In this document: one piece after another, positions 8,401 through 50,986 of the stretch | How the letters are laid out: every line of letters begins with the position of its first letter | Numbering within the stretch: position 1 is the first letter of the stretch | Assembly (NCBI GenBank): GCA_010909165.1 | Contig: MU008168.1 | Span: 806,001-870,000, forward strand | Direction of reading: 5' to 3' | Length of the DNA stretch: 64,000 bases | Origin: Anthoceros angustus | Lineage: Eukaryota > Plantae > Anthocerotophyta | Notes under the pieces: generated by a model | Databases searched by the model: none | Seen by the model: the letters and a program-made list of their open reading frames with translations, nothing else | What the model was told of the DNA's origin: nothing | Translations under genes and position numbers: made by a program

Positions 8401-9477
8401 TTCAACCTTCAGGAGGAAGTCAAGGAGCGGGAGCTGTGCGTGTTCTTTCGAAATAATCACTTCAGTACCATGTTCAAGGTACGTTTGTGGTTGTTACCTT
8501 TGAACACTGACCACCTGTTGGTAATTTTGTTGGTGTTGAGAATGTCCCTGATACGGGAGCTTTATCTTGTGCAGTACAACAATGACCTGTATTTGTTGGC
8601 CACCGACCAAGGCTACCTTAACCAAACTGATCTTGTTTGGGAGAAGCTAGATCGGGTATTATTGGACTTCAGCTCAACCTGCATGAAGTGTCCGTTTCTG
8701 CAATTTTTGTGTTGAGCTGTTGAGTTTTGTGTTGTAAAGGCCTTGATCTGAAAATGTTTGTTGTGGCTTGTAGGTGGATGGGAACCACTCGTTTTTCACT
8801 GGAAACTTCACTCCCTTCCAAGCTGAAAGCAACGTGGGTACATGGAATGAGCAAGATGCACTGGCTCGCACAGAGGTAGTGTCTCAGTATGACACATGAT
8901 TTTAGACTTTATCTGATGTCTTGATGATGCCACGTTCATTCCTGAGATGAGCTTTGTCCTGCTTTACAGAATTTCATCTCAACGCAGCGTGAAGCTGTTG
9001 CATCCGGTGCTGATTACAAGTAAGCCCGCTCCTGCTTGTTACTCGGAAGCACCTTGTAAGTGGAGTTGGCCAGCGTAGACTAACCCAGCTCTTATGTATC
9101 AGCACGGATCTGCAGCTAGCTCTAGCCCTTCAACAACAGGAATTTGACGAGCAGCAGCAGCAGGAGCTGCCAGCAGCTCAGGAAGCTGCACAGCAACAAG
9201 TGCGACAAAGGATATCTGAGCCTCTACCTGCACCGCAACCAACGAGGGCTTCTGCTATGAGTGCGGTGAATCGGCTCATCACAGTAAGTTCACTTTTTGG
9301 AATTGCACCTGCCCAAAAGCTTCAGCTTGCGATGATAAGCTTTAGCGAATTGTAGACACGCTATAGGCTGGCAGGCTAAATGTTAAACGGGTTGTCGTGT
9401 GCTGTTTACAGGGTCCAAGAACCAGCACGGCCTCCCCCAAACCCGATGCTAAAAAGGAAAAGTGTGTAATAATGTAA
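5438..9477 (+). CDS. MINDY: MINDY-1/2 (FAM63/DUF544) K48 deubiquitinase with MIU and C-terminal CaaX
   Basis: 12 exons (5438-5561, 6009-6127, 6228-6334, 6550-6631, 6772-8068, 8242-8293, 8397-8478, 8575-8655, 8774-8875, 8970-9019, 9103-9283, 9412-9477). Catalytic QSDNGPCPLL and FFRNNHFST, LATGIDVN, LYHGW, LATDQGY, MIU-like DLQLALALQQQEF; ends KCVIM*. Confidence 0.93.
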
Positions 9478-20619: not shown

Positions 20620-22930
20620 TGACGCCGTCATCTTCGTAGGTTCGGCATCATCACCGTCATCTTCACATCCTCTGTGCCACTTTGACTTGCTGGTTGTATG
20701 AAGCCCGCAATTCATTCACTTGTCCTTGATTGCCTTCTTGTCACCGTGACAGATGTTTAGAATTCAAGGTGAAACCATAATACAAGATGACGGTTTTGTG
20801 TACATAAACTTCTGAATATTTTTAGGTTCAACCCTTCGACCCCTTTTCCCCGGTTTGTTGCTTGGCTCGGCATCCCCCAATTATGTATTCTTCAACGTAC
20901 CTACCCTCAAACGCATCTGTGCTCGCCTGTACTGGAACAAGTAAGTGAGGTGGGTCATCAAACAAAACCGTCAATCACCTTCCCAATCCAAAATGGTCTT
21001 GTAGCGTGTCCTCGCTGGAACGCAATGAACATGCCCTTATTTATTTCAACACATCACCATTCAAACGTGTCATTCCTCCCATTGTCTTTCCAAGTTTTGG
21101 TATCGTCCCAAATACATATCTCGTTGTGGAAGGTCCTCAACAACGCCTCGTAATAAAGCTTCATCATCAAGTCGCAGAGGTTGGCATTTACTGGACCTCG
21201 AATACCACTTCCAAGGATGGAGGACGAGCCCAATGTTGTTTTGAATAACAGAATCTCTTGTTGGTCCACCCAAAAGCTTCCCACCATTTGTATTCCTCCG
21301 ATGTCACATAAGGCCTAAGGGCCGAAAGACCTTCCTTCAAATGAGCCACACCATCCGTAGGTGATAAGTCACCAACTTTCCTTTTCTATCCCTTGACCGG
21401 AGGCGGTTAAAGGCTTTATTGTGTCCAACGCACGAATGTCAAAAACTCAACCCGGCCTCTCTGTCTCCCAATAGGCTGATGTGGAATCGCTTGCTCGATG
21501 TGATTACAAACCCACGGTCACCTTTGGCTTCTCTCGTAATTTTGAATTGGTCTTTGGAAAGAGGTTGTTTAATTTTTTAGCCTTGTATGCGTGTCCACCT
21601 TCCCCTTATGGGCCAAACATATGACCGAAGTCCGAACTTGATCAATATCTTCACCTCCTGTGGAGTGTACGCACTAATCAAAATCTCGGCGGCGGGAAGA
21701 GTGTGAGCTTCCTTGTGTTTTAAGCTTTTGAAAAGCATGAAAACATTTGGTCGATTTGATCATGCGATGCCCCACCAACAAAACCCCACTTTCACCTTTT
21801 CAAACGTCCCCATGTCCACGAGCATGTTGAGATATGCAAAGCAATGATTGATTCTTGTTCTCTGCAGTGTTGTCCAATTGCAAATATAACACTTTCGGCA
21901 ATACTCCTTCGTAGTTATGAATAACATCACGGATGATGGTAATCGTAAGATTGGCATCATTCCAAGTTCGCATAATGCAAGTAAGCTCTTGCCTTAAAGC
22001 GTGTAATTGTGGATCATGCACCCAACCACATGAACTGAATCGGCACTCCTCATCCAAGTTCTTTGGCCATCAAGTAGATGGGAATCTCCGTCTTCTTTTG
22101 GTCCATTCCATCGATTGAAAGTAGAAGGTACATATGTGGTTCTACATAACTCTTGCTCCTGCCATCTTGACCGCTCACGATGCTAAGCGATGGGCATCTA
22201 AAGCCGCTTGATATTTTTGTTTTGACATACACACTCGTCGGTACATTTGAAGAGACATCCGATTAGATATGAAGGACCCTCCTATCTTTGAGACGCGCGA
22301 CGTCCCAAATCAACGGAGGAAGAACCTTCATGTTCCGTCCTAAGCGCATTTGCGAACAATTGGGTGGCGTACTCGAGCAACCACAATCCATGCCTTCGGC
22401 TTTTGGTTATGGAGCGGCGGCCGGCCACATGTATAAATTGTAGGGTGACCCTATGGTCCTTCGCCATGTGGGCGTTGGCGATTGGTATCCCTCGGTAGGA
22501 ACCTATGGTGCCGTTAAAGAGCACTGGAGGTGGGCGTGGCCATCTCCGGTGCTCTTCAACGCACCATAGGGTTCTTGGCCTCCAGGGCCGGCGGCGTCCA
22601 CATGTCTGGTGGCCTCGGGGTTTCATCCCAAGGGTTTTGCATATGTGGGGACGGTCTGGCGTCACCCATCCCATCATACAAAGATCGTAAGACCGGTTAT
22701 AGGGATCTTGCCCATAAAGCCTCGAGTTCAAAACAACCATTCCCCACTCAAGAAAACCATTCCATAAGTTCCCATGCATGTCAAGCCCGAAAGTGGTAAC
22801 AATTACCTTGATCGGATTTGTGGGGTTCCTAATTGTGCTCTTGAGACTGCGAGTGAGCACGTGGAAAACCTGTTGGATTTTGGTATTTTCACTCTTGGGA
22901 AGTTGCTTTTCCATAACTTCAAGAACCATG
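20620..22930 (-). mobile_element. Sola-like DDD transposase pseudogene, copy 2
   Basis: LLSIDGMDQKKT, DANLTITII, LPKVLYLQLDNT.ENKNQ, FAYLNMLVDMGTFEKVKVGF, IGLVLHPWKWY. Confidence 0.7.
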
Positions 22931-22949
22931 GATATTTCACATTATAATA

Positions 22950-25020
22950 AACTAAGTAGTGAAAAGAAATCAAAATCTATATAATAATATTTTTTTAGAG
23001 AATTCAAAGACTTTATAGATATTTGAAAGTATACATCCAAGTTCTCACCGAGAGTTTGAACTGCAGGAACCCTTGTAGGTACTAACTACTGGCAACTCCG
23101 CACACGACAGAGTCAAGGCAAGGTAGGATGTTTAGAACTGATAGCTCCGTAGATCTATGAAGCTGGGGATTAGTAACACCCCATCTGGGCATTGATCTGT
23201 CCAATTGCGAAGGGCGCTTAATTAGGGAGTTCAATGAACCCATGTTCAATGACCCCTATGCTTGGATGTCACTCCTTTGAACCGTCCGATCACGAAGGGC
23301 GCTTAACTGGGGAGTTCAATGAACCCATGTTCAATGAACCCTATATAGGTCTCGATGTTACCTCTTTGAACCATCTGATCATGAAGGGTGCTTAACTAGG
23401 AAGTTCAATGAACCTATGTTTAATGAAAACAAACAATGGAGACTTTATTAAGAAGAAGAGATGGGAAAACCCATCTACCGAACCGAGGGGACAACCCACT
23501 AAAGGGCCAAGAGCTAGGGCTAGCCTAGCCCCACGAATGCCAAAGCTCCCTACCAGTCCGATTGTCGTCGTCCGAGATGAGGAAAGGCCTACCTACTGGT
23601 GTCACGATGTCAGCGTCTCTTATACTCGTTGCCATCTTGTAAATAGCATTGGCCAATGCCCTGCAAGCGATGGATACACGCTATCGATAGAAATAGACCA
23701 CCGAGGAAAGAGGGAGACCCACCCGTTCCGAGCGGCTGTGGTAGGCTTTAGCACAATCGTTAATGAGCCGGAAAANACTAAGTAGTGAAAAGAAATCAAA
23801 ATCTATATAATAATATTTTTAGAGAATTCAAAGACTTTATAGATATTTGAAAGTATACATCCAAGTTCTCACAGAGTTTGAGCTGCGGGAACCCTTGTAG
23901 GTACTAACTCACGGCAACTCCCGCACAGCGAGTCAAGGCAAGGTAGGATGTTTAGAACCGATAGCTCCGTGATCTATGAAGGCGGGATTAGTAACACCCT
24001 ATCGGCATTGATTCCAATTGCGAAGGCGCTTAATTAGGGAGTTCAATGAACCCATGTTCAATGACCCCTATGCTTGGATGTCACTCCTTTGAACCGTCCG
24101 ATCGAAGGCGCTTAAGCTGGGAGTTCAATGAACCCATGTTCAATGAACCCTATAGGTCTCGATGTTACCTCTTTGAACCATCGATCATGAAGGGTGCTTA
24201 ACTAGGAAGTTCAATGAACCTATGTTTAATGAAAACAAACAATGGAGACTTTATTAAGAAGAAGAGATGGGAAAACCCATCTACCCCGAACCGAGGGGGG
24301 ACAACCCACTAAAGGGCCAAGAGCTAGGGGGGCTAGCCTAGCCCCACGAATGCCAACCCGAAGCTCCCTACCGTCCCGATTATGTCGTCGTCCGAGATGA
24401 GGAAAGGCCTACCTACAACTGGTGCCGCTGATGCCGCGTCTCTTATACTCGTTGCCATCTTGTAAATAGCATTGGCCAATGCCCTCTGCAAGGCGATGGA
24501 TACACGCTATCGATAGAAATAGACCACCGAGGAAAGAGGGAGACCCACCCCGTTCCGACGACTGTGGTAGGCTTTAGCACAATCGTTAATGAGCCGGGAA
24601 AACTCCTTGTCCATAGCCCCTTGACTCTCAATGGCGAGGGAGATGAAGGCATGGCTGTCCTGCAAAGGTGTGTACTTGTGTACCTTAGCTAAGTCGCGCC
24701 CTCAAAAGCCATGAAGGGTATGCCGGCTCCATGGACAATCCCAGTGGGCTGCTTGAGTCAGGGGTTGCATCCCCTCCTACAACGCTCCTGACGGTGGCTT
24801 CCCCACCTCGGGTCCTTCTTCACGGTGGGCTGGCTCCACCACCGTGGTGGCTTCCTAGCGGTGGTTGTTTTACCACCCTTGATGGGCCCTCTGCCTTCTT
24901 GACTGCCCGTCTCTCTTGACCACAGCCTAGAACAGTCCATGGGAGGGTTAGTGTACATGTGGTCTTCCACAGCTTCATAGGCCAATATACGCTGAACAGG
25001 GTTCGTGATGGGTATCAAAT
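22950..25020 (-). mobile_element. CRE-like (RLE) non-LTR retrotransposon remnant with 3' tandem repeats; its 3' part appears twice across an N
   Basis: KVHKYTPLQDSHAFISLAIESQGAMDKEFSRLINDCAKAYH...RVSIALQRALANAIY, homologous to 11560-11780. Segment 22951-23775 is repeated at 23777-24602. Confidence 0.65.
23211..23425 (+). repeat. ~85-bp tandem repeat (about 2.5 units) in LINE 3' region; duplicated at 24022-24232
   Basis: Unit gaagggcgcttaa..ggagttcaatgaacccatgttcaatga.ccctat...tttgaacc.tc.gatc starts at 23211, 23294 and 23383. Confidence 0.75.
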
Positions 25021-25800: not shown

Positions 25801-26034
25801 TGACGAAAAGCAAATATAACGCAGATTAATTAAGCAACAAGCAATAATTACATCATATTAATCATAAAGAAGTAAGTAATGTATAAGTGCTAAACACCTA
25901 TATTGGTTTTACGAAACGATATGACTTTTCGCCTAAGGGACGTAACCCTAATGAAAGGGTAAGCTGACTCAACTTAATTTAACCCTAACTTATTAACATG
26001 CTAACAACACCTAAACGACTTAGGTTTTTCTTCA
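25801..26034 (-). repeat. 3' LTR of Copia family A
   Basis: Direct repeat of 32666-32899, preceded on the - strand by the PPT. Confidence 0.95.
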
Positions 26035-26173
26035 CTCCCACTTGTTGTAGCAGGTTAAGTATAGGACTATCCTCCAGAGCATCGCCTCATGACAGTCTCT
26101 TGAGCTTCTCCAGTGTCTTCACGATTGTGTACCTTGTGCAAACCATTACGCTCCAGCTTGCGCCTAGAAAACC

Positions 26174-27128
26174 ATGGATCCAGACAATATGGAGCCATTT
26201 CCACTGAGGTGCGCTTCTTTTATAAGCGTGGCCTACGCCCTCACCTCAATTGTCCAGCTCTTGTTCGAGAAACACAAGCTCACCATGTCGTCTTGCGGAT
26301 CTGAAGCTCGGGGCGCACCTATGAGCGTGGCGCTTTGCGGAAGGGAGCTCGGACACCGTCGGCAATGTGATGAAATTGTAGGCGGGTACATGGAACAAGC
26401 AGTGCAGGCGCAGCTCGAGGCTCCATACTTGCAAGGCGACCAAGAGGGCGCCCACCAGGCAGAGCTTCAACTAGGGGGCGAGGGGCTCAAACTGTTGGCA
26501 CCTCAAGCATGCCAGGCCCATCACGCCCCGCTGCAGCTGCCCCAAGACCTGTTCACCCTAGGAACCGGGAGGTGGAGTGCGAGTATAATGACCACGAGAC
26601 ACAACCCAAGAAGCCTTTTATGTTCCCTGAGACAAACGACTACCTAGAGGAGACCAAGATAGTGAGCGTTGGCAGCGTCACTAATCCCGGCACCCCTGTC
26701 TGGTACCAGTGCAGGTTTAGCCAGCTGATGATGAAGCGCGTGAGGATCCAAGTCTGTAGAGAGTACCCCGGTCATGTTGTCAGCTCATACCGTAAGTTCT
26801 GTCACGCCCTTGCTTACTTTCCTGTTTAATGCTACCTTTGGCAGCAATTCTGAGCCATAGCTCCCACTGTTTGCTAAAAGTGGCAAATTGTCTTCTTTAT
26901 AGGTTCTGAGATGAGACTCAGGGAGGAGGAGTGCCTAGTCTCCCCTGAGAGAATCTCGTACGAGGAGAGGCGCAGGCGCAACACCCCTAGGTCTGATGAG
27001 AGTACCAAGACCCAGAGTCTGTAGAAGACTCTGATAGTGAAGATTCTGATGGAGATCCTCCCAAGTCTCCAGGATTTCTCAGTGATGAAGACAATGATTG
27101 CTCAAGTTCTCACTTCAGCTGGGGCTAG
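26174..27128 (+). CDS. Antisense, spliced accessory ORF of Copia family A (AT-hook, acidic tail; frameshifted in assembly)
   Basis: ATG at 26174. A second frame, open from 26374, encodes RRPRGRPP and PVHPRNREVECEY...VSSYR. Intron 26792-26902 (GTAAGT..TAG) rejoins in frame to SEMRLREEECL.. and then a D/E/S-rich tail ending about 20 bp before the pol stop. Confidence 0.6.
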
Positions 27129-27147
27129 GCCTTTTGAATTTGTCTTT

Positions 27148-30100
27148 TCAGACCTTGTGATGCTGGAGGAAGTCTTTTGACCTCCCCAAGCCAAGACTCT
27201 TTACATGTCGCATGTGCAAGTCTCTGCCCAACGCCTTGGTAAGTATGTCGGCAGGATTTTCAGCTGTAGGTACGTAGTCAAGAACTATTTTCCCTGCTTG
27301 CACAAGCTCTCGTATGAAATGGTACTCTACTTCCACATGTTTTGTACGCGAGTGAAACACAGGGTTCTTAGCAAGTGCCATTGAACCCTGATTATCAGTG
27401 TTGATAATCGTACAGGTAGGTAGGCTGATCCCCATTTCCTTGAACAGCAATTTCAGCCACAGAATTTCTTTATTCTTGCCGTTAGCACCGATACTCAACC
27501 CGATCTTGGATGTTGCTACGATTAAGTTTCTTCTTTGCTCCAACATATGGGTCCTCCAGCAAAACAAACCACGTAGCCAGAGACCGATCTTCTAGAATCC
27601 ACATCCCAGCATGATGCGAATGCATGAATACCTCTAAGTCTAAAGTCTAGGTAGGCGTCTTTTGATAGGCGGTCTTGTTCCTTTAAATACCTGAAGACTC
27701 GCTTCAAGCATTGCCAGTGTTCTTGTCCAGGGTTCTCTAAGAACTGCGACAGGGCACTTGTGGCAAAGGAAATGTCTGGCCTTGTGGTATTGGAGGCGTA
27801 GATTAGCTTTCCTACTCCTTTCCTGTAAGGTATGTTAGCCATTGCTTCCTGTTCATCTTGAGTTTCTGGACTCATTTCTCGACTGAGTTTAAGGCCAGTA
27901 GGAAGAGGGGTCGAGGCTGGTTTTGCGTCCTTAAGGCCCATCTGTTCAGCACAGTCCAGCAGGTACCTAGGTTGGGTTAAGGTAATGATCCTCCTGTCCC
28001 TGTTTCTTTGAACATGAACGCCCAAGCAACTCTGAAGTGGTCCCAAGTTGGTCATCTCAAACTTGTTTGCTAACAGCCCATTCAGGTCTGTGATAAATTT
28101 GGGGCTGTTGCAAGCTAGTATTAGGTCGTCCACATAGACAGCGAGATAACAAACAGTATCCCCTTTCCTATATACATAGAGGCTTCCATCTGCCTTGCAT
28201 TTGACAAAGCCTAGAGCAAGAAGCTCCTCATCAAGAGCCTCGTTCCACTTTAGTGCCGATTGTTTGAGACCATACAGAGTTTTAATCAGACGTAATACAT
28301 AGTCTTCCTTTCCCTTTACCTCATATCCAGGTGGCTGCTGCATGTAAATTTCTATGTCAAGCTTCCCATGTAGGAAAGCTGTCTTAACGTCGAACATCTG
28401 CAGCTCGTAGTCCTTGTGTGCTGCAACAGCACATAGAGTACGAAAAGTGGCCATCTTAACAACAGGTGCATATGTCTCGAAGTAGTCAAGGCCTGGCATT
28501 TGAGTAAAGCCTCTAGCAACGAGTCGAGCTTTATATCTATCAAAGGTGCCATCTGCTTTAACCTTGAGCTTAAAGACCCATTTACAGGACACCATCTTGC
28601 GACCTGGAGGTAACTGTGCAAGTTCCCATGTGCCATTTTTTATTAGAGAATTATATTCTGATTGAATGGCCTTTTTCCATTCTGCTGAATCAGGTCTACA
28701 AAGAGCTTCTTCATATGACTGAGGCTCAACAGGATCAAGGGAAGTTGCATGAGCCTGTGCCCTAAAATCAATTGATTGATAGTAATCGGGAGCACGTCTC
28801 TGTCTTGCAGGATAACGACGCTGAGGCTCAGGTTTAGGTTCAACAAGAACTTCATCTTCTGCAGCATCAGCCATATCATCTTCCGCAGCTGGTTCGTTTT
28901 CATCTTCAGGGTCTGGTTCCTGTTCATTGTTGACAGGCTGTGGTTGATTTTCATTCACTGGTTCGCCTTCCAGATCAACTAACACTGCCTGGTCATCCTG
29001 GTCAACTTTCAACCGCTGGTTGTTCGTCCCCACCAACAGGACCAGCATCCTCAAAGGGAAAATCGACCAAATGTGAGGCAATTTCGTCTTCATCTGCCTC
29101 AGCAGAAGGGTCCCCACCTGGTTGGGAAACTACCATTGCCCAAGGAACCTTTTCATTAAAGGTAACACTCCTGGAGTAAATGACCTTGTCCTTTGAAACA
29201 TCATAGAGTTTGTAGGCCTTGATGCCCTCAGTGTACCCAAGCATAAGAAGTTTCTGTGCTTTATCTAACACCTTCTTACGTTTTTCCTTAGGAATGAAAG
29301 CATAAGCTACACAGCCAAAGGTTCGAAGGTGAAGGACAGAGGGCTTCCGACCACAAAAGGCTTCATAGGGTGTCATACCCACAACTGAATTTGTAGGCAA
29401 CCTATTCCTGAGGTACACCGCTGTGGTTAGGGCCTCTGCCCAATATGGCAAAGGGAGATGAGCATAATGAAGGAGTGACGCTGTCATCTCCTGAAGTGTG
29501 AGATTCATATGCTCAAGAACTCCATGTGGAGTACACATCGTGAGTAAGCCCAATGCCCTCCTGCGCAGTGGTGCGGAATTCCTTGGAAGTGAACTCCCCA
29601 CCATTATGCGAACGGTGTCTTCACTGCTTCATTCAGTCACCAAGAAACTTAAGGTAAGTTTTGAAGTGTGAAAAGCATTCACTTTTGGCCTGGAGTATAT
29701 AAGCAGTGACAAAACGTGTCTTGTCATCGGTGAAGGTGAGGAAATATTTTCCACCACCTAGGGAAGGCTGCGACAAGGGGCCACGCTGGTTGCCAATTTC
29801 TGCAACTTAGCACTATGGGGATGGCCTAACCTAGCATGCCACAGCTGACTCTTAGCTATTTGCTGTGCAGTGGCTAGGGATGTGTCCTGTGTGAGATGTG
29901 AAACTGGCATTCCACTCTGAATATGGAGACGAAAGAGATCGTGATCTGATGACCCATAGGCAAGTATTTTTCTATGGTCAAAAGCATCTATCACCTGGCA
30001 TTCTGTAGTTGTAAACAGAACATGACTATTATTATCTGAGTTGAGTTGCCTAACTGAGATCAAATTCCTAGTCATGTCAGGTACATAATAAACATTGTTC

Positions 30101-31295
30101 AGAATGAGGGTCACTCCAGAAGGAACTGGCAAGTAAACCGTGCCTATGCCGGGTGAGACAAGTGAACGATCATCCCCTAGGTAAACATCGATCCGATGGC
30201 GGCACAGCATGTTTTATACCTCTGTCAAAAGCAGATGTGCTTGTAGCACACTAGGTACCATTCTATCAATGGTCTAACCTCTACTTTGCTGGACAAACAC
30301 GTGGGAAGGAGAAGTGGGTTAGAAAATTCCCTGGTGCCAACTGTAAGAGCAGAAGGGGTATTATTTTTCTTTACCACAACATTCGTTTCAGCTAAATTGC
30401 CTTCCTTTCGAGGCTGTCCAGCTTGTTTCTTTCTGCATTCACGCTCCCAGTGACCTGGCATTTTGCACCAATTGCAGCTGCCAGTCCTCTTGGGTTTCTT
30501 CGTGTTGCTAGAAGAGAAGCCAGCAGAGTGAGAGCCACTGCTACCCCTTTGAGAATTTCCTCCTCCTCCTCGAGGGTTATTTCTAGTATTTCCTCCTTTA
30601 CCCTTGTTTGAAGTGTAAAGGGCTTGCTGTTTTCCTGAACGTGTACTTGTGGTTCCCCTAGTGGCTTCCTCCTGCAGAAATGCTCCCACTACCTCAGAGA
30701 ATGTAGGTGCTGGGAGTGTCACATTAGCTGCCTTGGCTAATTTTTGTGTCTGCGCATATGAGGTATTGTACGATGTCACAAAGTGTGACCAGGAAGCTGG
30801 TAAGGACAGCATCAGGTACATGATGTATAGCTCGTCCCCCATGGGGTCCTTAGACAACGCCTCAAGCCTGGAGACCAGAGTCCTGAAATGCCCAATATGC
30901 TTTTCAATGGACTCTCCATCTTTCATCTTCAGGTTAGTAAGGTACTTGAGGGCTGTCATTTGGGTTGATGGATTGGAGCCTGAATACAGATCATGGAGAC
31001 GAACCCACAGCTCATTAGCAGTCTTGGCTCCCACTGTCTGCCTCAGCATATCAGCTGTAAGGCCACTTCGGAGCAGATACATGGCTGCGTCATCTTTGAC
31101 TGTCCATGCATCCTTGTCATCCTGCGATTGTGAGGCTGGTTTCGCCTTTCCATCTGTAATCTCCCAAAGCCTTTTTGCTTGGAGTGCTCCCTTCATCCTC
31201 ATGACCCAAATGTCATAGTCATGTCCCCCAAACCTATCCTTTTCCTTGAAGCTTTCTAACGAGACTCCACTAGAGGTGGAGGCTGCGTCACCCAT
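27148..31295 (-). CDS. Copia gag-pol polyprotein, family A (several frameshifts)
   Basis: Gag FKEKDRFGGHDYDIW, zinc knuckle CNWCKMPGHWEREC, GAG-pre-integrase LWHARLGH, integrase YWAEAL, RT YKARLVARGF and VYVDD, RNase H TDNQG..HSRTKHV..ADILTK. Confidence 0.92.
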
Positions 31296-31639
31296 TGTTA
31301 CTTTTCTAACTGTTGGACTTGTAATCCAATCCAGCCAGGAGAAGTCTAAATCAGAATCACTAGTATTACCAACGGGCATAACAAGGATGTCTAAACTCTG
31401 ATTTTAGGAGGAGACTATCGGCTCTTCAAGCCAAACGTTAGACAGGTGAGTTTGTTTTTTTTTTTTAAAATCTGCACCTATCTATTTATGCTGCTGATGA
31501 GGGATTCCTGAGTAATTTTTGCTGCTCATTACGGGGCAGCCTAAAGGAAGACCTAATCCACCAACCACAAAGCTTCAGCAGGCCCAACAGGATCATGTAG
31601 GGTTAACAACTGCTGATTTTCTCTTTGTGCAATCTGATT

Positions 31640-32275
31640 TCACCTATTTTCCCATCGATTGTGTGCATATGTTGAACATGAAGGGCAAGCATTTGGCTCA
31701 TAAAACCTATACTTACTGTTTACTTTCTTGACAGATTTCATAGCTGCTGATCTAAACACGGGGTTACACAGCAACTCTGCCTTCAGCAAGGTATGTAATT
31801 TGAAATCTATGTGCCTTATTTGCTCTTGTACGTCCTTCAGATCTACACCAAGGGTTGCAATAGACCTATTTGTGTGAATGTGATGCCTATCAACATAGGC
31901 TGCGTGGGTCTCTAATCTTTGAGCCAACTGATTCACAGAAATGTGTTGTGCAGATTGCGGAGTGAGAAAATTGTTAGGGTTACCAAACTGGCCAGGAGCG
32001 GCCTCTGGAGCACGCTGTTGAAGTTGCCTAGGATCTGTAGTAAAAGTTAGGTGCTGGTAATCTGGGTAGAGGGTCTCAACCAATGTATTGAAGGCCCTTT
32101 CAAGTTCAAAGGTCTGGAATGGTCTGTCTTGATTTCTCACAGTCCATTCGTAGGTCCTTTGATGCAATCTTTCAGCAAGATTCCTATCAGCAGCCCTAGT
32201 CCTCAGGCGATTCTGGCGTTGTTGAATTTGTTCAGCGCGAGGCTGCCACTGCTGGCCCCCGCCGTTGTTTGCCAT
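31640..32275 (-). CDS. Extra 211-aa ORF between PBS and gag of Copia family A (coiled-coil-like, C-terminal CxxC)
   Basis: Intact ORF MANNGGGQQW...ISVNQLAQRLETH...LKDVQEQIRHIDFKL...ACPSC on the element sense strand, with its own stop and separate from gag. Confidence 0.7.
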   Translation of the reverse strand: MANNGGGQQWQPRAEQIQQRQNRLRTRAADRNLAERLHQRTYEWTVRNQDRPFQTFELERAFNTLVETLYPDYQHLTFTTDPRQLQQRAPEAAPGQFGNPNNFLTPQSAQHISVNQLAQRLETHAAYVDRHHIHTNRSIATLGVDLKDVQEQIRHIDFKLHTLLKAELLCNPVFRSAAMKSVKKVNSKYRFYEPNACPSCSTYAHNRWENR

Positions 32276-32665
32276 GTAAAATGGCCAGATTTTTTATTGT
32301 ACAAATGCATTTAGAATACATTCTTGAACTCTTTTAAATTTTATAAATTGCCTTTGAAAATGCTTGTTGTGGGATCTGACGGGTGTCCTAGCGTGCCTAT
32401 TTTAGAATTGCTCAAATAGCAATCTAGAATAGGTGCGTTAGGATGCTATTCAGATCTTCATAAAGCAGATTCCAAGAAAAGGCAAATTAAAAATACAAAG
32501 AAAACAATCAAAATCCTGTTTCTTGATTATTTGCTCTATCCTTTAAAGAAACCATTTTCTATAGAAGATAAGAACAAAATATATATGTTTGTGCACACCC
32601 TAAGATGCACAATTTGATGTGCATTCTCTAGAATGCAATCCACGCTAATATATGCTCTGATACCA

Positions 32666-32899
32666 TGACGAAAAGCAAATATAACGCAGATTAATTAAGC
32701 AACAAGCAATAATTACATCATATTAATCATAAAGAAGTAAGTAATGTATAAGTGCTAAACACCTATATTGGTTTTACGAAACGATATGACTTTTCGCCTA
32801 AGGGACGTAACCCTAATGAAAGGGTAAGCTGACTCAACTTAATTTAACCCTAACTTATTAACATGCTAACAACACCTAAAAGACTTAGGTTTTTCTTCA
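32666..32899 (-). repeat. 5' LTR of Copia family A
   Basis: Adjacent to the PBS; direct repeat of 25801-26034. Confidence 0.95.
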
Positions 32900-32959: not shown

Positions 32960-35150
32960 TTCTACCAACCATCAGAATCACATCCTCACTCTTCGCCTGA
33001 CTGTAAACCTTCTTCCTCGGACAGGACTACTTCATCACCATCATCTTCACTATCGATAGCTGCATCTAGGGTGGAGGGCACGATGTGAGGACGAAGAGCA
33101 TTCAATTTCTCCGATCGCTTGTCTTGCTGTAAGAGATGTTTCTCGGATGTCACTGAACCCATAATATACAATAATGGTTTTACTGACGAAGAGCTCGGAT
33201 GTCTGGAGGCCTCGAAACCTTTTCCCGCCTTGCCTTTCAAAGGTGCTGCTATGTCGCTATCAGACCTGAGAAAGTATTCCCCTACATACTTCCCTTCAAA
33301 AGCATCTGTGTGTTTCGGTCCGCCACCAGTGCACAAAGAAATAGGGGTCAGGGACGGTGAGGTGGACACCAACAACCTTGGCCACCCAGAACGCCCTATT
33401 GTGAGTATCGCCCTCACAAGGCGTTACAATGAACATACCTTTTCTAATCTCCATGATGTCACCATTCATCCTCTCCACTTCCTCTTCACGCTGCTCAACG
33501 CTCGACATGCTCCTCGGTACATGTCCTGTTGTGGTACATCCCGCAATAATGCTTTGTCTAGGAGAGCTTCATCCGGAACCAGCAAGGGAGGCACATTTGC
33601 TTCTGCCTCTGCCCTATCGTACCACTTCCACGGGTTTTTCAAAACAAGTCCGATGTTATGGTCCACAATCGTTGCGATCTCCTCTTGATCCTTCCGATCA
33701 TCCCACCACTCCCCTCAACAAAGATTCACATAAGTTGGTAACTTCAGCATCCCTTTCTTCAAGTGATCGCCATCATGCGCTCAAGCCTCCTCCAATCCCT
33801 TTCTTGTCTTTCGCTGCAATGCCATTAAGGGAGTTGGGCCGATGATCTTTGTAGGCACAAACGACAAGAACTCAGGCCATCTTCGCTTCCCACAATGGAG
33901 AAGTCAGTATTGTTTACTCCGGAATGACTGCTACCTTTTCCGTCCCACTTTGTCTTCTTGGGTAATTTTGAACTGTTGGAGCGAAGGTTGTTCAACTTCC
34001 GCTACTGACTTTGTACTTCGACCTCCTTCCTCCTAATCGCACGGCCACACAAATGAACGGAAATGCAACCGTCACCACCTTCACTCTGGTTCGTTGTCTC
34101 TCAAAATGTCCATATAGTTGGTAGGGTTCTAGCCTCTTTGTGTTTATGTTTCGAGAAACAAGAAAACATTTGGTCGACTTGATCGTGTGTATGCCCAACA
34201 AGAAGAAAACCAACTTCACCTTCTCAAACGCTCCTGTGTCGACGAGCATGTTGAGGTAAGCAAAGAGCGGTGATTCTTGTTCTCCTACATGTGTCCAATT
34301 TGCAAATATAAAACTTTAGGAAGCAACCCTTCATAAGTGAGGATCATCACCTGTATAATAGAAATCGTCAAATTTGCATCATTCCTCAAATTTCATAGTG
34401 GAGATCGCCTTGAATGTGTAATTATGAATCATGCAACCCACTACATGCACTGTAATCTTGTTGTCCTCTTTTAAGTCCTTCGGCCACCTTAAGATATGTC
34501 CACACACAGAGAATTCCACTTCACGCTTTAACACATGTCACCAATGCTCTACTGTAATTGCTTACTTTGCTGAGAAGATTGAGGCATGCACGCCGCAAAA
34601 GGGCGAGTCATATCTGGCGTGCAAAATTCGCTTTGGTTCTTCTTTAAATCGAGCTCTATGAATTGGGAGGCATCTTCGCCTCCAAAATCAACATCGCCAT
34701 CACGTTCCTTGTGAATCGGCAACCACGTGACCCACATTGCCGTAAAGTTTCACTACAAAGGGCAATAGAAGCGAGCGGCACAGTGGTATCACCTCGGCGT
34801 CATGAAGAATGTGCGTAGCTTGCAGCATGATGTGGGACTAGAACCTTGACGACCTCGCCGGTGACACCAATAGTCGCCAACCTCAAACTATAGCCCTTTG
34901 CTTTCTTGCTCTCGTGTTGTACCTCTCTCACATTCGACCATGTATGGAACATTGAATGGGTGGAAAACGGGTTTCACGTTTCTTGAAAGCCAAAGCAACA
35001 ACAGGGCCAATCCCTTCTACAAGAAGTAAGTGGGCAAAATATTTTTCCACAAGGCATGCATCATTCTGACATCTAGCGGATCGAATCGGCTCAATTTATG
35101 GTTTTAACCACGGTAAAGCGGCGTTTCCATCTTCGCCATAACTAATTTAG
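32960..35150 (-). mobile_element. Sola-like DDD transposase pseudogene, copy 3
   Basis: LLPKVLYLQ..ENKN..FAYLNMLVDTGAFEKVK..LVGHTHDQVDQMFS; IGLVLKNPWKWY; KGMFIVTPCEGDTHNRAFWVAKVVGVH; acidic C-terminus. Confidence 0.7.
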
Positions 35151-40139: not shown

Positions 40140-40460
40140 AGGGCCTCCTTCCTTTCCCTCTCCCCTCCTCCTCCTTCCCATCTCCCCTCCTCTTCCTTCC
40201 CCTCTCCCTCCTCTTGCTCCTCTTCTTTTCCATCTTCCTCCTCCTTATAATCTCCCCTCCTCCTTTCCCCTCCTCCTCCCCTCCCTCCTCCTCCTCCTCC
40301 TCCTCCTCCTCCTCCTCCCCTCCTCCTCCTCTCTCCTCCTCTCCTCCTCTCCTCGTCCTCTCCCTCCTCCTCCTCCACCTCGGATCCCTCTCCCCTTTTC
40401 CTCCTTGCCTCTCCCCTTCCTCCTCTCCTCCTCTTCCTCTCTCCTCCTCCTCCTCCTTGC
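40140..40460 (+). repeat. Polypyrimidine (CCT)n-rich tract
   Basis: About 320 bp almost entirely C/T, including a perfect (CCT)n run near 40285-40318. Confidence 0.9.
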
Positions 40461-42771: not shown

Positions 42772-43011
42772 TGTTAAACTCCATAGTTTATTATAGTAAC
42801 CACGGTCACTGGGTTACTTAAACTAGGGTTAAATATATTACTTAGGGTTTAGTATTTAAGACCAACTCTTTGTAATCATTAATATCATTATTCATTATTC
42901 AAGTTTGTTGTTCTCTCTAAGCAATATTGTCATGGTATCAGAGCACGGTATCATCTATCTTCATTGCCTTTGCTAAGAGAGACATCTGCAGACATTTCCT
43001 ACGATTGGAAA

Positions 43012-43590
43012 ATGCCTCGCCTTAATAGGAACCGTGTGCTGCAAACAAGAGTTTCTTTAATTTCATCAACGATAGATATATCGAGAGAGAGGGATAAATC
43101 TAGGGCGCCAACTATCACGATCATCTTCATTCATGAACTCTGCTCAGCCACCGAGGTTCCGGCTGTCATTCTACATCTCCACATTACCGCCATCTTGAGC
43201 AGGTTTAGGGTATCACAGGATAGAAGGAATTCACAAATAACATAGGGCTATGAGCAACCTTGCAGCCAAGGCAATCAAACCGCGGAAGCCTGGCGATTTT
43301 GCTTAGTGAGGTTTATGATGAACCCGTTGTTACCTTAGGAGACTTGCAAGTGATCTTTGTTTCGACACAACTGCAGCACTTACGGGACAAATTTTTACGA
43401 AAATCAGCGGCATTATTCAAGGCAACTTGATGCCTGGCAAAACAATTCGAGGCGAATACGAATTGGATGGCCCCATAGTTGATGGGCATCGCCACGATCT
43501 TAGAATTTAGCGGGCATTGCCCGGCCTCCCTACCTAGCAAATTTGACAAATTTGCAAAAAGGGACGGGAGATTCGAAGAGTCGTGAGCTA
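43012..43590 (+). CDS. Extra ORF between PBS and gag of Copia family C (frameshifted; second copy 57035-57630)
   Basis: Consensus of the two copies: MPRRNRNRVPANKSFFNFITDRYIRERDRLG...RAVSNLAAKAIK...EVYDEPVVTLGDLQV.LFRH. Confidence 0.5.
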
Positions 43591-44029
43591 GAAACCGAAA
43601 GGACGGCAATTAAGTTGAAGCGGCACGGCAACATCGTGCAGATCAGGTCAGCACGAGGGTTTAATTAATTAATTAATTAATTGATTGATTTTAACCCATG
43701 AGCAAATAAAGCTCAACGGCTTTATGCCGTCTCGCTTCTCAACCGTCAACCATTGGCCACCCTTTCACCTTCCGTGACCGTCGGTGACGGGATTACGCTA
43801 ACTTACTTGGCGGATTCGATCTGTGCACCAGGAATATAGAATTTGATTGAAAGATCGGACGGTGAGTGATTTGTGCACCGAGCCGAGCTTTGATCTTTGC
43901 ACTAGGGTTATTTATGCACACGCAAGGCAGGATTGCATGCGAGATTAAGCGGGGATCGCCAATTTGCAAAAGGACCGGGCTTATTTTTCATTACATTCCG
44001 TACACACACGGTGAGCATCTGATGGGATC

Positions 44030-44305
44030 AGCGCCGCCCTCACGGCCTCACGGCACGATCAGCCCAGGCGCCGCCCTCGCGGCCTCACGGTAGGATCGGC
44101 CCGCGGCGCCCTCGGCCTCACGGCCTCACAGCGAGATCGGCCCGCGGCGCCGCCCTCACGGCCTCAGCCGAGATCGGCGCGGCGCACGCCCTCACGGCCT
44201 CACAGCGAGATCACCGCGGCGCCGCCCTCACGGCCTCACGGCGAGGATCGGCCCGCGCGCCACGCCCTCCACGGCCTCAGCGGCGGACGACCTCGGGGTT
44301 TCACG
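44030..44305 (+). repeat. GC-rich CACGGCCTCAC tandem repeat in family C leader (again at 59800-60025)
   Basis: ~36-bp units gcgccgccctcacggcctcacagcgagatc. Confidence 0.75.
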
Positions 44306-44856
44306 GCAGCGGGGATCAGTGCAGAAAGGCGCCGAGGATCGTATTCCTCGGCCGCCTCATTGCACGGCCCGGGATCTGCCCGCAGCCCGGGATCGTCGCA
44401 TGGAGTGGAGGATCAACCCCTTGGATATGCCGTGCCCATATCCGCCATCTCGTGCAACCCGGTAGACACATCATGGCTGGAAATTCGAGAGCCAAGGTTG
44501 ATAGCGAGGACATTAGCGCTGCTCCCGAATTCAGGCGAGGAGGCCACTACGGATCACGGGTCTGTAGAAAACCTAGCTAGCGAATCATACTTCTACACTA
44601 GGTTAGAGTTAGTTCTACATTTTAAGTTACAACTTCGTTATAGCGGTTTAATAACGTATTCCTTGGACATATAGCCAAGGCTATTTTCCCTTTCAATACA
44701 CTCTTCATTTCATGCTTCCTTGCTCTTGCCTCTTTGCATAAATCTAAGCACATGATGCACCTTCACACTTCTGTTGTTTGATCCGGTCATCTCTTTATAT
44801 TAGAGCCTACTTGGTAGGTGTGCTAGCGGTGGATCACCACACACCTAATCTTCAAG

Positions 44857-45336
44857 ATGCCTAAGATTTGCGGCTGCAATTTCGGGCCGATCAGCGGAAG
44901 CAGGGGACTCATCTCCCTTGCCTGTCACGATTGCAGATCTGGCGCGCCCCCACCGACCGGGGACATCCTGCCGCGAAGGGCGCCGCCAGGAGGAGCACCT
45001 ACCGATCTGCTACACCCCTTGCACTCGGTTGCCGCGATCTGTATTCACACGAAATCAACTCGACTGCGACAGTTGCCAAGGGCGTCTTCAATGCGCCAGG
45101 ACACACATTAGTCGCATGAGAACAGCGAAACCGCCATCTTCCGTGAACTCAGCAATCTGAGGGGGCGTGTGAAGTCAAGAGATCTTCTTATTAGGAGAAT
45201 CTGCGGGTATTGTTAGTCTTGCACTCATCGATAATTTCCTGCATGACCTTCCTCGTTAGTTGCTCATGTCAACTGCCCCATGCCATGCTTTAGCTTGCCT
45301 TTTTCCTATGCAAGCTCAGAACCAGGAAGGAAATGA
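44857..45336 (+). CDS. Extra ORF between PBS and gag of Copia family B (frameshifted; second copy 60577-61063)
   Basis: Consensus of two copies: MP..QFRADQRKQG...EEHLPICYTL..RLRDHIFTRNQLDCEVAKGVFN...ETAIFRELSNL...DLLIRRIC. Confidence 0.45.
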
Positions 45337-45457
45337 TGAGCCTCTTGACATTGCCTTCTTGTTTGCTGCCTTCCCCTCTTGGGATTTCTCTCCTTCAATT
45401 TGCTAGAGAGCTAGGCAAATACAATTTCAAGCTTTTCATCCATCCTCAACCCACATC

Positions 45458-49691: not shown

Positions 49692-50577
49692 TCAACCCTT
49701 GTGTGGGAGCTTGCCAGTTTTGTCCAGGGATTTGATCAGTTCCTCCCTCGTTCTGTTTGCCCTGGCAAACTCCTCAATAAGGGCTGCATAACAGAAAGTG
49801 GGTTAGTATGAATACATATGAAGCTTAGCAGCATTCAGTTTCTAGGCACTTACATCCATAGGTCACCAGCAGGCCAGTTTCCGTCATGTGAGGTTAAGGC
49901 TTCTTCTTCTCTTTTCCCTTTTTCGCTGCAGTCTTAATAGGCTTTCGTCCCCACTCTTTCTCCATGTAGGCTTCGTCTTCTGAGTCGATTGGAAGTGGAA
50001 CTTTGATGTAGTTCAGCAGCTCCTCTTTGCTTGGATCAACTCCTACGTCCACTACACCAGCCTTCTTGCTCTTCTTCTCTGTCTCCCTCACTGTTGCACC
50101 ATTGAAGTCTGCTGAGGCAGCCGCAAACACTTGTTTTGGGTTGCCTCTGTTGTCAAAGTTCTGTATTCTCCTTGCTGTTTTGCCCTTGGACGTATCCGTA
50201 GGAAGTGGATCACCCACAGGGGAGTTGAAGGACACCATGTTGGAGTCCGGGCAGTTCATGGCGTGGAGACACGACTGCCTCTCGGAGAACTTGCGCCTTT
50301 GGGATCACAGGCGATCACCCAGACACCCGGACCACGGATGGAGTCTTCCATTTTGGCGATTACAGGTGTGGCCTTGTTGCGGGAGGCGGTGGACAACAAG
50401 CGGAGGCGCCCGGTGAACCGTCACCACCAGCAAAGTGAGCTCGACTGCATTGAGTGTGGCCATGGCTGCCTTTATTCGGAGTGATGGAGCGTAACAAGAT
50501 GAGCGTAAGGACTGGAGTGCAACTGGAGTGAAAGGTGTAGGACAGTTCTCACGTTTAGCAGGAGTCAGGAGACTCAT
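49692..50577 (-). CDS. Antisense, spliced accessory ORF of Copia family B (basic NLS-like stretch)
   Basis: ...SKEELLNYIKVPLPIDSEDEAYMEKEWGRKPIKTAAKKGKEKKKP*PHMTETGLLVTYG | intron 49853-49784 (GTAAGT..TACTAAC..CAG) | SLIEEFARANRTREELIKSLDKTGKLPHKG*. One in-frame stop and frameshifts in the assembly. Confidence 0.6.
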
Positions 50578-50986
50578 GATGTTCTTTAGTTGTACTTTTG
50601 TAATTACTCTTGCTTCCCGTTTTTGGCTACTAAAATGCTAAAACTAAGTGGGAGTGTAGAAAACCTAGTTAGCGAATCATACTTCTACACTAGGTTAAGA
50701 GTTAGTTCTACATTTTAGTTACAACTCAGTTATGACGGTTTAATAACCGTATTCCTTGGACATATAGCCAAGGCTATTTTCCCTTTCAATACACTCTTCA
50801 TTTCATGCTTCCTTGCTCTTGCCTTTTTGCATCGTCTCTAAGCACCGCCACATGATGCACCTTCACACTTGCGCTGTTTGATCCAGGGCTGTCATCTCTT
50901 TAGGTGCCGCCTCACGAATTCTTGGATCGTGCTCTTTCTCTCCTACGCAGACCGCTTTTGGTCGAGGCATTTGGCTCTTTTATGCC

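What the first reader, a model, noticed from the sequence alone, without database searches (positions are those of the whole stretch)
26174..27128. Antisense Copia-A gene encodes an AT-hook protein with an acidic tail
Seen: the frame open from 26374 reads ...ILARRPRGRPPGRASTRGRG..., a canonical AT-hook core (RPRGRP, 26437-26454). It is followed by a globular-looking segment (PFMFPETNDYLEETKIVSVGSVTNPGTPVWYQCRFSQLMMKRVRIQVC), a GT-AG intron that rejoins in frame, a basic RRRR patch and a D/E/S-rich end. The element's own LTR is very AT-rich. Inference: a nuclear DNA-binding protein with an activation-like tail that could bind its own LTR.
Basis: partly seen in the sequence, partly recalled or inferred. 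Interest (0 to 1): 0.8.

Follow-up and report, generated by a model that had tools for sequence, protein, structure and literature searches.

The report
Antisense orphan ORF inside a Copia element
A young Copia retrotransposon carries, between its polymerase gene and its far repeat, a backwards-facing, intron-containing open reading frame with no known relatives; the "AT-hook" and "acidic tail" that made it look like a DNA-binding regulator lie in other reading frames than the start codon and the best-supported coding core, and are probably not translated.

Summary
RPRGRP is at 26437-26454, the quoted peptide follows it, a 111-nt GTAAGT...TAG intron (26792-26902) rejoins in frame, and a D/E/S-rich reading ends at 27128.

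They do not form one gene model, because three different frames are involved:
- the ATG at 26174 (good context, aaaaccATGg) is in frame B;
- the AT-hook and the core are in frame A, whose first ATG is at 26509;
- the acidic tail is in frame C.

The well-supported part is a core in frame A (about 26562-26791 plus 26903-27024) with GC3 of 0.69-0.74, and the three-base periodicity disappears in the intron.

Across the AT-hook segment, frame A has GC3 of 0.37 and frame B 0.68. A position model trained on the core prefers B by about 21 nats, and the composition changes at about 26560. RGRP appears off-frame in about 6% of codon shuffles.

No relatives were found in Pfam, PDB, 5.8 billion or 1.84 billion proteins, or metagenome contigs, and no second copy could be reached.

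Best reading: an orphan antisense accessory ORF of the known "aORF-3R" kind, broken in this copy, as pol is. The AT-hook/HMGA-like interpretation is not supported.

The parts
25801..32899 (-). Copia-A, a complete Ty1/copia LTR retrotransposon (7,099 bp) that contains the finding
   Evidence: The two LTRs differ at 1 of 234 positions. The 5-bp target duplication ATACT is perfect on both sides. Pfam finds gag, integrase SH3-like and RVT_2 domains on the minus strand.
25801..26034 (-). 3' LTR in the element's sense (TG...CA, 234 bp, 32% G+C); it lies upstream of the antisense ORF on the + strand
32666..32899 (-). 5' LTR
32654..32665 (-). Primer binding site TGGTATCAGAGC directly after the 5' LTR. 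That it is complementary to initiator tRNA-Met is from general knowledge.
   Evidence: Read from the sequence.
27148..31379 (-). gag-pol region, split over at least five ORFs. Frame breaks lie near 29540, within 29050-29150 and near 27540.
26174..26647 (+). Frame-B ORF (157 codons) starting at an ATG in the context aaaaccATGg. It is the only open frame over 26174-26373.
   Evidence: A position model trained on the core picks frame B in 26174-26373.
26437..26454 (+). RPRGRP (AT-hook-like core) in frame A. It lies upstream of frame A's first ATG (26509), and the same bases read QGDQEG in frame B.
   Evidence: frame tests
26562..26791 (+). Core coding segment in frame A (GC3 0.69). The 5' limit is the compositional change point; frame A itself is open from 26374.
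26792..26902 (+). Putative GT-AG intron of 111 nt (GTAAGT ... ttctttatAG) with three frame-A stops, 43% G+C and no codon periodicity
   Evidence: Introns of the host gene in the same window are about 97 and 118 nt.
26903..27024 (+). Second core exon in frame A (GC3 0.74), with the RRRR patch and a TAG stop at 27022-27024
27000..27128 (+). D/E/S-rich 'acidic tail', open only in frame C (42 codons, GC3 0.32). It is not continuous with the core.
   Evidence: A codon model trained on Copia and host ORFs mildly prefers it (in the row mislabelled 'S5 tail frameB').
31640..32275 (-). Extra sense ORF of 211 codons in the 1.27-kb leader between the primer binding site and gag (context only)
   Evidence: codon model +14.8 nats, no Pfam or PDB match.

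Best explanation
Copia-A (25801-32899, minus strand) carries, in the 1.1-kb spacer between the end of pol and its 3' LTR, an antisense accessory gene. This is the kind described for other LTR retrotransposons as antisense extra ORFs between pol and the 3' LTR (aORF-3R).

Inferred mechanism:
- It is transcribed on the + strand from a promoter at the inner edge of, or inside, the 3' LTR.
- Translation starts at the ATG at 26174.
- It contains a 111-nt intron (26792-26902). The intron survives retrotransposition because it is antisense to the genomic RNA and cannot be spliced out of it.
- The protein ends at the TAG at 27022.

Shown:
- position and orientation;
- strong three-base periodicity in 26380-26559 and in the two core exons, and none in the intron;
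- canonical splice signals of the host's intron size class.

The product would be an orphan protein of roughly 200-250 residues. It would have a Q/L/A/E-rich first half (frame B), a small beta-rich core and an arginine patch (EERRRRNTPR). It most plausibly acts in the nucleus, like the accessory protein of maize Grande, but that is analogy only.

In this copy the gene is broken. The reading has to change from frame B to frame A somewhere within 26374-26645, and the composition puts the change near 26560. pol of the same copy also has at least three frame breaks.

On this reading the RPRGRP 'AT-hook' is the off-frame translation of a Q/G/D/E-coding stretch, and the acidic tail lies beyond the stop.
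For: Element and position:
- LTRs, target duplication, primer binding site and domain order establish the element and show the region is internal and antisense.

Open frames:
- Two + strand frames are open for 151 and 159 codons, against 77 or fewer on the minus strand. Two such frames occur in 0.2% of dinucleotide shuffles.

Periodicity (chi-square):
- 31.1 for 26380-26559, above the 99th percentile of the window;
- 14.3 and 7.2 for the core exons;
- 0.5 for the intron.

GC3:
- Core GC3 is 0.69/0.74 in the same frame on both sides of the intron.
- In 26380-26559, GC3 is 41/60 in frame B and 22/60 in frame A.

Position model trained only on the core:
- It picks frame B in 26174-26373, where B is the only open frame.
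- It prefers B over A by 20.8 nats in 26380-26559, with the change point at 26559/60.

Codon permutation:
- If B is translated, frame A stays open over the segment in 55% of permutations and shows RGRP in 5.8%.
- If A is translated, B stays open in 12%, or 2% over the whole overlap.

Other support:
- Host introns in the window are about 97 and 118 nt.
- A second Copia family in the window has the same layout: a 1-kb spacer with a 121-codon antisense ORF and a positive codon score.
- The class is described in PMC7264820 and PMC11963269.
Against: - No relative of the frame-A exon-1 peptide was found in 5.8 billion clustered proteins within the length band 0.55-1.75x, in 1.84 billion representatives read exhaustively or in metagenome contigs.
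- No piece has a Pfam or PDB match.
- Only one copy of the element could be reached, so conservation is untested.
- No transcript data were available.
- The model still needs one frame break.
- The frame argument rests mostly on third-position G+C in about 60 codons. Frame C, which has stops, scores even higher on the same model, so the segment's composition is unusual.
- The codon model trained on Copia and host ORFs gives only weak positive scores: +0.03 to +0.07 nats per codon for three pieces and about zero (-0.02) for the third, against 0.05-0.16 for most known ORFs.
- AlphaFold models without an alignment are poor for both frames.
Confidence: 0.5

Rival explanations
1. One protein starts at 26174, shifts into frame A near 26370-26400, carries a functional AT-hook, continues through the spliced core, and shifts again near 27005 into an acidic tail. 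It acts as a nuclear DNA-binding regulator that binds the element's own AT-rich LTR.
For: - ARRPRGRPPGR matches the AT-hook pattern: an RGRP core with basic and proline flanks.
- [RK]xRGRP appears in only about 1% of frame-B codon shuffles.
- Frame A is open from 26374.
- The LTR is 32% G+C with seven A/T tracts.
- The tail reading is favoured by the Copia/host codon model by about 5 nats.
- This copy demonstrably carries frame breaks elsewhere.
Against: - It needs two unverified frame changes.
- GC3 in the proposed frames is 22/60 for the AT-hook segment and 11/34 for the tail, against 78/110 in the core.
- Frame B is about 21 nats better over the AT-hook segment, and the change point is near 26560, not 26370-26400.
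- There is only one GRP.
- There is no Pfam AT_hook, PPC or HMG match.
- RGRP occurs 5 times by six-frame translation of this window alone.
- AT-hooks bind any A/T tract, so an AT-rich LTR gives no specificity.
Confidence: 0.12
2. There is no protein. The spacer is a non-coding 3' region, possibly giving an antisense regulatory RNA that pairs with the genomic RNA, and the open frames are by-products of its composition.
For: - No homologue was found anywhere.
- A single ORF of this length occurs in 4-7% of shuffles.
- No continuous ATG-to-stop model covers all the periodic segments.
- Antisense non-coding transcripts of retroelements are documented (PMC7264820).
Against: - The three-base periodicity is among the strongest in the 64-kb window, and it vanishes exactly in the GT-AG interval.
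- The same GC3-rich frame lies on both sides of the intron.
- The + strand is depleted of stops but the minus strand is not.
- The ATG is in good context.
Confidence: 0.2
3. It is a fragment of a host gene (exon-intron-exon) captured in reverse orientation by this element lineage and now decaying. It has no role in the element's life cycle.
For: - Core GC3 (0.69-0.74) is unlike gag-pol of the same element (0.40-0.51).
- An intron is retained.
- The reading is broken.
- Gene capture by LTR retrotransposons is documented (PMC7264820).
Against: - No host parent gene or any homologue was found in the very large libraries.
- The ORF begins with its own well-placed ATG 140 nt from the LTR edge.
- Another Copia family nearby has an unrelated antisense ORF in the same position, which suggests a recurring design rather than a one-off capture.
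Confidence: 0.18

Closest known systems
Antisense additional ORFs between pol and the 3' LTR (aORF-3R): maize Grande gene23, rice RIRE2, Silene Retand ORF4, Phaseolus PvRetro13 ORF2, Botrytis Boty (PMC7264820; PMC11963269)
   Same: - The position (pol to 3' LTR spacer) and the antisense orientation are the same.
- Most are orphan-like sequences with no clear database similarity.
- The suspected role is nuclear or regulatory.
- The review itself calls for a search for spliced antisense transcripts.
   Different: - The named examples I can place (Grande, RIRE2, Retand) are Ty3/gypsy elements with spacers of several kb; here the host is a compact Ty1/copia element with a 1.1-kb spacer.
- There is no Transposase_28 or SMC domain.
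- A putative intron is present.
- Conservation across copies and transcription, which define the published cases, could not be tested here.
AT-hook proteins (HMGA; plant AHL family)
   Same: One RPRGRPPG string in frame A, and a D/E/S-rich stretch reminiscent of the HMGA tail.
   Different: - HMGA has three AT-hooks and a contiguous acidic tail; AHL proteins have a PPC/DUF296 domain.
- Here there is one motif and no PPC domain.
- The motif and the tail are in frames different from each other and from the ATG.
- Codon composition argues against translation of either.
Retroviral antisense accessory genes (HTLV-1 HBZ, HTLV-2 APH-2), as cited in PMC11963269
   Same: The gene lies on the strand opposite to gag-pol, is expressed from the 3' LTR side, is spliced, and its product is nuclear.
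   Different: This is an analogy of layout only. There is no sequence relationship, no bZIP or other domain, and no expression data here.
Bidirectionally transcribed Ty1/copia elements (apple Mdoryco1-1, Arabidopsis AtRE1 antisense promoter; cited in PMC7264820)
   Same: Copia elements with antisense promoter activity.
   Different: As cited in the review read here, those reports concern antisense promoters and transcription. I did not read the original papers, so I cannot say whether a spliced antisense coding gene is described in them.

Membership tests
AT-hook motif (Pfam PF02178 / SMART AT_hook) | Core R-G-R-P flanked by basic residues | tested here: met
   ARRPRGRPPGR is present in frame A at 26431-26463, with the core at 26437-26454. 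This is a string match only.
AT-hook motif (Pfam PF02178 / SMART AT_hook) | The motif lies in the translated frame, continuous with a start codon | tested here: not met
   - Frame A has stops at 26368 and 26371, and its first ATG is at 26509.
- The upstream ATG (26174) is in frame B.
- GC3 is 22/60 in frame A against 41/60 in frame B, and the position model favours B by 20.8 nats.
AT-hook motif (Pfam PF02178 / SMART AT_hook) | Profile match | tested here: inconclusive
   No Pfam family was reported for 26374-26559 even at E<=10. The model is very short, and HMMER's filters drop weak hits.
HMGA | Three AT-hooks plus a contiguous acidic C-terminal tail in a small protein | tested here: not met
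   Frame A has one GRP only. The acidic stretch is in frame C, beyond the frame-A stop. There is no PDB match.
Plant AHL (AT-hook motif nuclear-localised) | AT-hook followed by a PPC/DUF296 domain | tested here: not met
   No Pfam domain was found in any piece.
aORF-3R (antisense extra ORF of LTR retrotransposons) | Located between pol and the 3' LTR, antisense to gag-pol | tested here: met
   pol ends at 27148 on the minus strand and the 3' LTR is at 25801-26034. The ORFs lie on the + strand at 26174-27128.
aORF-3R (antisense extra ORF of LTR retrotransposons) | Present and conserved in most copies of the family | not testable with these tools
   There is one copy in the window. Exact look-ups, the metagenome scans and the protein libraries gave nothing.
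aORF-3R (antisense extra ORF of LTR retrotransposons) | Transcribed from its own antisense promoter | not testable with these tools
   No expression data were available. There is only a TATA-like TATAGG at 26060-26065 and an ATG in good context, which is inference.
Retand-type aORF (Transposase_28, PF04195) | TRP28 domain | tested here: not met
   No Pfam hit.
Ty1/copia LTR retrotransposon (the host element) | gag, then integrase before reverse transcriptase, TG..CA LTRs, 5-bp target duplication, tRNA-iMet-type primer binding site | tested here: met
   - Retrotran_gag_2, SH3_retrovirus and RVT_2 are found in that order on the minus strand.
- The LTRs are 234 bp.
- The target duplication is ATACT.
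- TGGTATCAGAGC follows the 5' LTR.

The most novel reading that the evidence does not exclude
A Copia lineage of a poorly sampled, probably plant, genome has evolved its own spliced antisense accessory gene. Copia-A and the unrelated Copia-B ORF would be two instances of this design. In intact copies the Copia-A product really does include the AT-hook, making it an element-encoded nuclear DNA-binding regulator that recognises the A/T tracts of its own LTR.
Probability: 0.1. Interest if true: 0.7.

Novelty: new member of a known kind. Interest (0 to 1): 0.33.

Why it matters
Antisense accessory genes of LTR retrotransposons are known, but their functions are not, and the cases I could find are mostly Ty3/gypsy elements. 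A compact Copia element with a spliced antisense gene, next to a second Copia family with the same layout, would extend this design to Ty1/copia. It would also give a small, tractable case for asking what such genes do.

The practical lesson is that the eye-catching motifs (AT-hook, acidic tail) are not evidence of function here. They sit in alternative frames of strongly periodic, G+C-biased sequence, where such strings arise easily.

Tried and rejected
Searches that found nothing:
- Pfam on every piece, at E<=0.1 and then E<=10.
- Word-indexed protein search with the 139-residue frame-A exon 1.
- Exhaustive HMMER search of 1.84 billion representatives with the same piece.
- Metagenome scan with six back-translated peptides: 422 pattern matches, none confirmed.
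- Metagenome scan with the 33-nt LTR/primer-binding-site junction: 0 matches.
- Exact-protein look-ups of the two antisense ORFs and of gag.
- PDB sequence searches of the core, the frame-B ORF, the AT-hook segment and the leader ORF: only chance-level antibody hits.
- Rfam and tRNA scans of the window.
- tblastn of all pieces against the window for paralogues, or for similarity to the Copia-B antisense ORF.

Attempts to identify the organism, both unsuccessful:
- The RT ORF has best hits of only 36-47% identity, spread over plants, fungi and oomycetes.
- The large host exon has one Logan hit at 33%.

Other analyses that did not help:
- AlphaFold2 without an alignment gave mean pLDDT 44 and 41 for the two frames. 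This is unusable, so no fold search was run.
- The bacterial promoter/terminator scan is irrelevant for a eukaryote.

Ideas considered and set aside:
- A 176-nt intron at 26386-26561 would remove the frame problem without any break. I rejected it as the main model because that interval is about 63% G+C and has the strongest codon periodicity of the region, and because 173 in-frame GT-AG joins exist by chance.
- Translation from ATG 26509 alone leaves the periodic segment unexplained.
- Programmed frameshifting: I saw no canonical slippery site.
- A chromodomain-like reading of the core was my impression only and has no profile support.

Full report
**Where the finding sits.** The window is eukaryotic and not human-like.
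- It holds several Ty1/copia elements.
- It holds one host gene with a MINDY deubiquitinase exon (Pfam E=4e-20) and short GT-AG introns of about 97 and 118 nt.
- The organism could not be identified. The best relatives of the reverse transcriptase are only 36-47% identical and are spread over plants, fungi and oomycetes. The large host exon found one hit at 33%. From memory, the MINDY exon looks plant-like; that is a lead, not a test.

**The element.** Copia-A occupies 25801-32899 on the minus strand.
- The LTRs are 234 bp (25801-26034 and 32666-32899), differ at one position and have TG...CA ends.
- A perfect 5-bp duplication, ATACT, flanks the element, and TGGTATCAGAGC follows the 5' LTR.
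- gag, integrase and reverse transcriptase lie in Copia order.
- pol is split by frame breaks near 29540, within 29050-29150 and near 27540.
- The finding lies in the 1.1-kb spacer between the pol stop (27148) and the 3' LTR, on the opposite strand.

**The observation.** They are in three frames.
- Frame B (codons at 26375+3k) holds the ATG at 26174, in the context aaaaccATGg, and is open to 26647.
- Frame A (26374+3k) holds RPRGRP at 26437-26454 and the 'globular' segment. It is closed by stops at 26368 and 26371, and its first ATG is at 26509.
- After GTAAGT at 26792 and ttctttatAG ending at 26902 (111 nt, three in-frame stops), frame A resumes and ends at TAG 27022.
- The acidic stretch is open only in frame C (27000-27125).
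They are assumptions, not observations.

**Is anything coding here?** Yes, probably.
- The + strand has open runs of 151 and 159 codons, against 77 or fewer on the minus strand. Two such runs occur in 0.2% of dinucleotide shuffles, although one alone occurs in 4-7%.
- Three-base periodicity of G+C is very strong in 26380-26559 (chi-square 31, above the 99th percentile of all windows of that size).
- It is clear in the two core exons (14.3 and 7.2) and absent in the intron (0.5).
- The core has GC3 of 0.69 and 0.74 in the same frame on both sides of the intron.
- The intron has canonical signals and the size of the host's introns.

**Which frame carries the AT-hook segment?** Four lines of evidence favour frame B over frame A.
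- Over 26380-26559, G+C by phase is 0.68/0.85/0.37 read in frame A and 0.85/0.37/0.68 read in frame B.
  - Frame B therefore keeps the GC3-rich codon style of the core and of 26174-26373, and puts the G+C peak at codon position 1, as in the most strongly periodic known coding segments of this window.
  - Frame A would need GC3 to fall to 22/60 and rise again to about 0.7 at about 26560.
- A position-specific model trained only on the core chooses frame B in 26174-26373, where B is the only open frame.
  - The same model prefers B to A by 20.8 nats in 26380-26559 and places the change point at 26559/60.
  - Caveat: it scores frame C (which has stops) even higher there, so the segment is compositionally unusual and the test rests mainly on the third position.
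- Permuting codons gives the same direction.
  - If B is translated, frame A stays open over the segment in 55% of trials, contains RGRP in 5.8% and contains [RK]xRGRP in 1%.
  - If A is translated, B stays open in 12%, or 2% over the whole overlap.
- RGRP occurs five times in the six-frame translation of the window. KPRGRPP occurs next to a G+C-rich tandem array.

I conclude that the AT-hook is more likely the off-frame shadow of a Q/L/A/E/G-rich coding stretch than a translated motif.

**The tail.**
- In frame C its GC3 is 11/34, again unlike the core.
- A codon model trained on the window's Copia and host ORFs mildly prefers frame C, by about 5 nats. This is, where the row labelled 'S5 tail frameB' is in fact frame C.
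- Frame A also stays open beyond the TAG.

The tail is unresolved, but it is not needed: the core ends at a normal stop.

**Gene models compared.**
- A model that follows frame B to about 26560, then frame A through the intron to TAG 27022, needs one break, somewhere within 26374-26645.
- Two models need none: starting at ATG 26509, or an extra intron at 26386-26561. Both leave or remove the most strongly periodic segment. In addition, 173 in-frame GT-AG joins exist by chance.
- One break in 0.85 kb matches the density of breaks in pol of the same copy.
- Whether these breaks are real or assembly errors cannot be told from the window.

**Limits on the spliced model.**
- The script only enumerated joins to test ORF continuity.
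- No mended or frame-corrected sequence was built. I give the break intervals but not any change that would close them.

**Relatives.** None were found.
- Pfam and PDB gave nothing.
- The 5.8-billion-cluster word search within its length band gave nothing.
- The exhaustive search of 1.84 billion representatives gave nothing.
- Metagenome contigs gave nothing, either by peptide or by the LTR junction.
- Exact look-ups gave nothing.
- The absence claim holds for the frame-A exon 1. The frame-B ORF was searched only in Pfam and PDB.
- AlphaFold2 without an alignment was uninformative.

**Comparison with what is known.**
- Antisense extra ORFs between pol and the 3' LTR are an established, functionally unexplained class. 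Examples are Grande gene23 (a nuclear protein with its own promoter), RIRE2, Retand (Transposase_28 domain), PvRetro13 (SMC-like) and Boty (PMC7264820 and PMC11963269).
- The present case shares position and orientation, but none of their domains.
- It sits in a compact Copia element and appears to have an intron.
- The defining properties of the published cases, conservation across copies and transcription, could not be tested.
- Membership in the AT-hook, HMGA or AHL families fails on features that were tested.

**Verdict.**
- There is a plausible antisense, spliced orphan ORF in a young but defective Copia element. It is a new member of a known kind and moderately interesting, especially because Copia-B in the same window has an unrelated antisense ORF in the same position.
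- The AT-hook/acidic-tail/LTR-binding interpretation is not supported.

My probabilities:

| Reading | Probability |
|---|---|
| Accessory gene, broken in this copy | 0.50 |
| Non-coding spacer or antisense RNA | 0.20 |
| One-off captured host fragment | 0.18 |

Noticed in passing
window 49894-50259 (minus strand), inside Copia-B (LTRs 44563-44797 and 50655-50902): A second, older Copia family on the + strand has the same layout. A spacer of about 1 kb follows pol (which ends near 49650) and holds a 121-codon antisense ORF that is K/E-rich, has a positive codon score, no Pfam match and no similarity to the Copia-A ORF.
   Followed up: partly
window 31640-32275 (minus strand): Copia-A has a 1.27-kb leader between the primer binding site and gag. 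It holds a 211-codon sense ORF in a different frame from gag, with a codon-model score of +14.8 nats and no Pfam or PDB match.
   Followed up: partly
window 27148-31379 (minus strand): The LTRs of Copia-A differ at only 1 of 234 bases, yet pol has at least three frame breaks and a degenerate integrase motif. Either a defective copy was mobilised in trans, or the assembly has indel errors.
   Followed up: partly
window 6766-8800 (+): A host gene: a 462-codon D/E/S-rich exon followed by MINDY deubiquitinase exons (Pfam E=4e-20), with introns of about 97 and 118 nt. Its only database relative is one Logan contig at 33% identity.
   Followed up: partly
window 22980-24650: A direct duplication of about 820 bp containing 82-89-nt tandem repeats, with the window's single N at 23776. 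This may be a TE terminal region or an assembly artefact.
   Followed up: no
window 42821-43697 and 56847-57737: Long direct repeats (92-99% identical in the aligned blocks), 14 kb apart, bracket Copia-B and a further set of Copia integrase/RT ORFs (52859-56190). This looks like a nested insertion of one LTR element into another.
   Followed up: no
window 60367-64000 (+): The 5' part of a second Copia-B copy, 90-100% identical in blocks to 44655-48119, is cut by the window end.
   Followed up: no
window 21716-22057 and 33992-34265: Diverged repeats (about 75% identical) lie on both sides of Copia-A, 12.4 kb apart. One of them encodes a DUF7869 domain (Pfam E=2e-10). They are probably remains of another transposon family.
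   Followed up: partly
window 44031-44301 and 59805-59956: G+C-rich tandem arrays of 29-37 nt units. KPRGRPP (just beyond the first array) and WRGRPP (59212, about 0.6 kb before the second) appear by translation near them, which shows how easily RGRP strings arise in G+C-rich DNA.
   Followed up: partly
window 40160-40457: A long imperfect CTC/GAG trinucleotide array, which reads as poly-G/E/R or poly-L/S/P ORFs.
   Followed up: no
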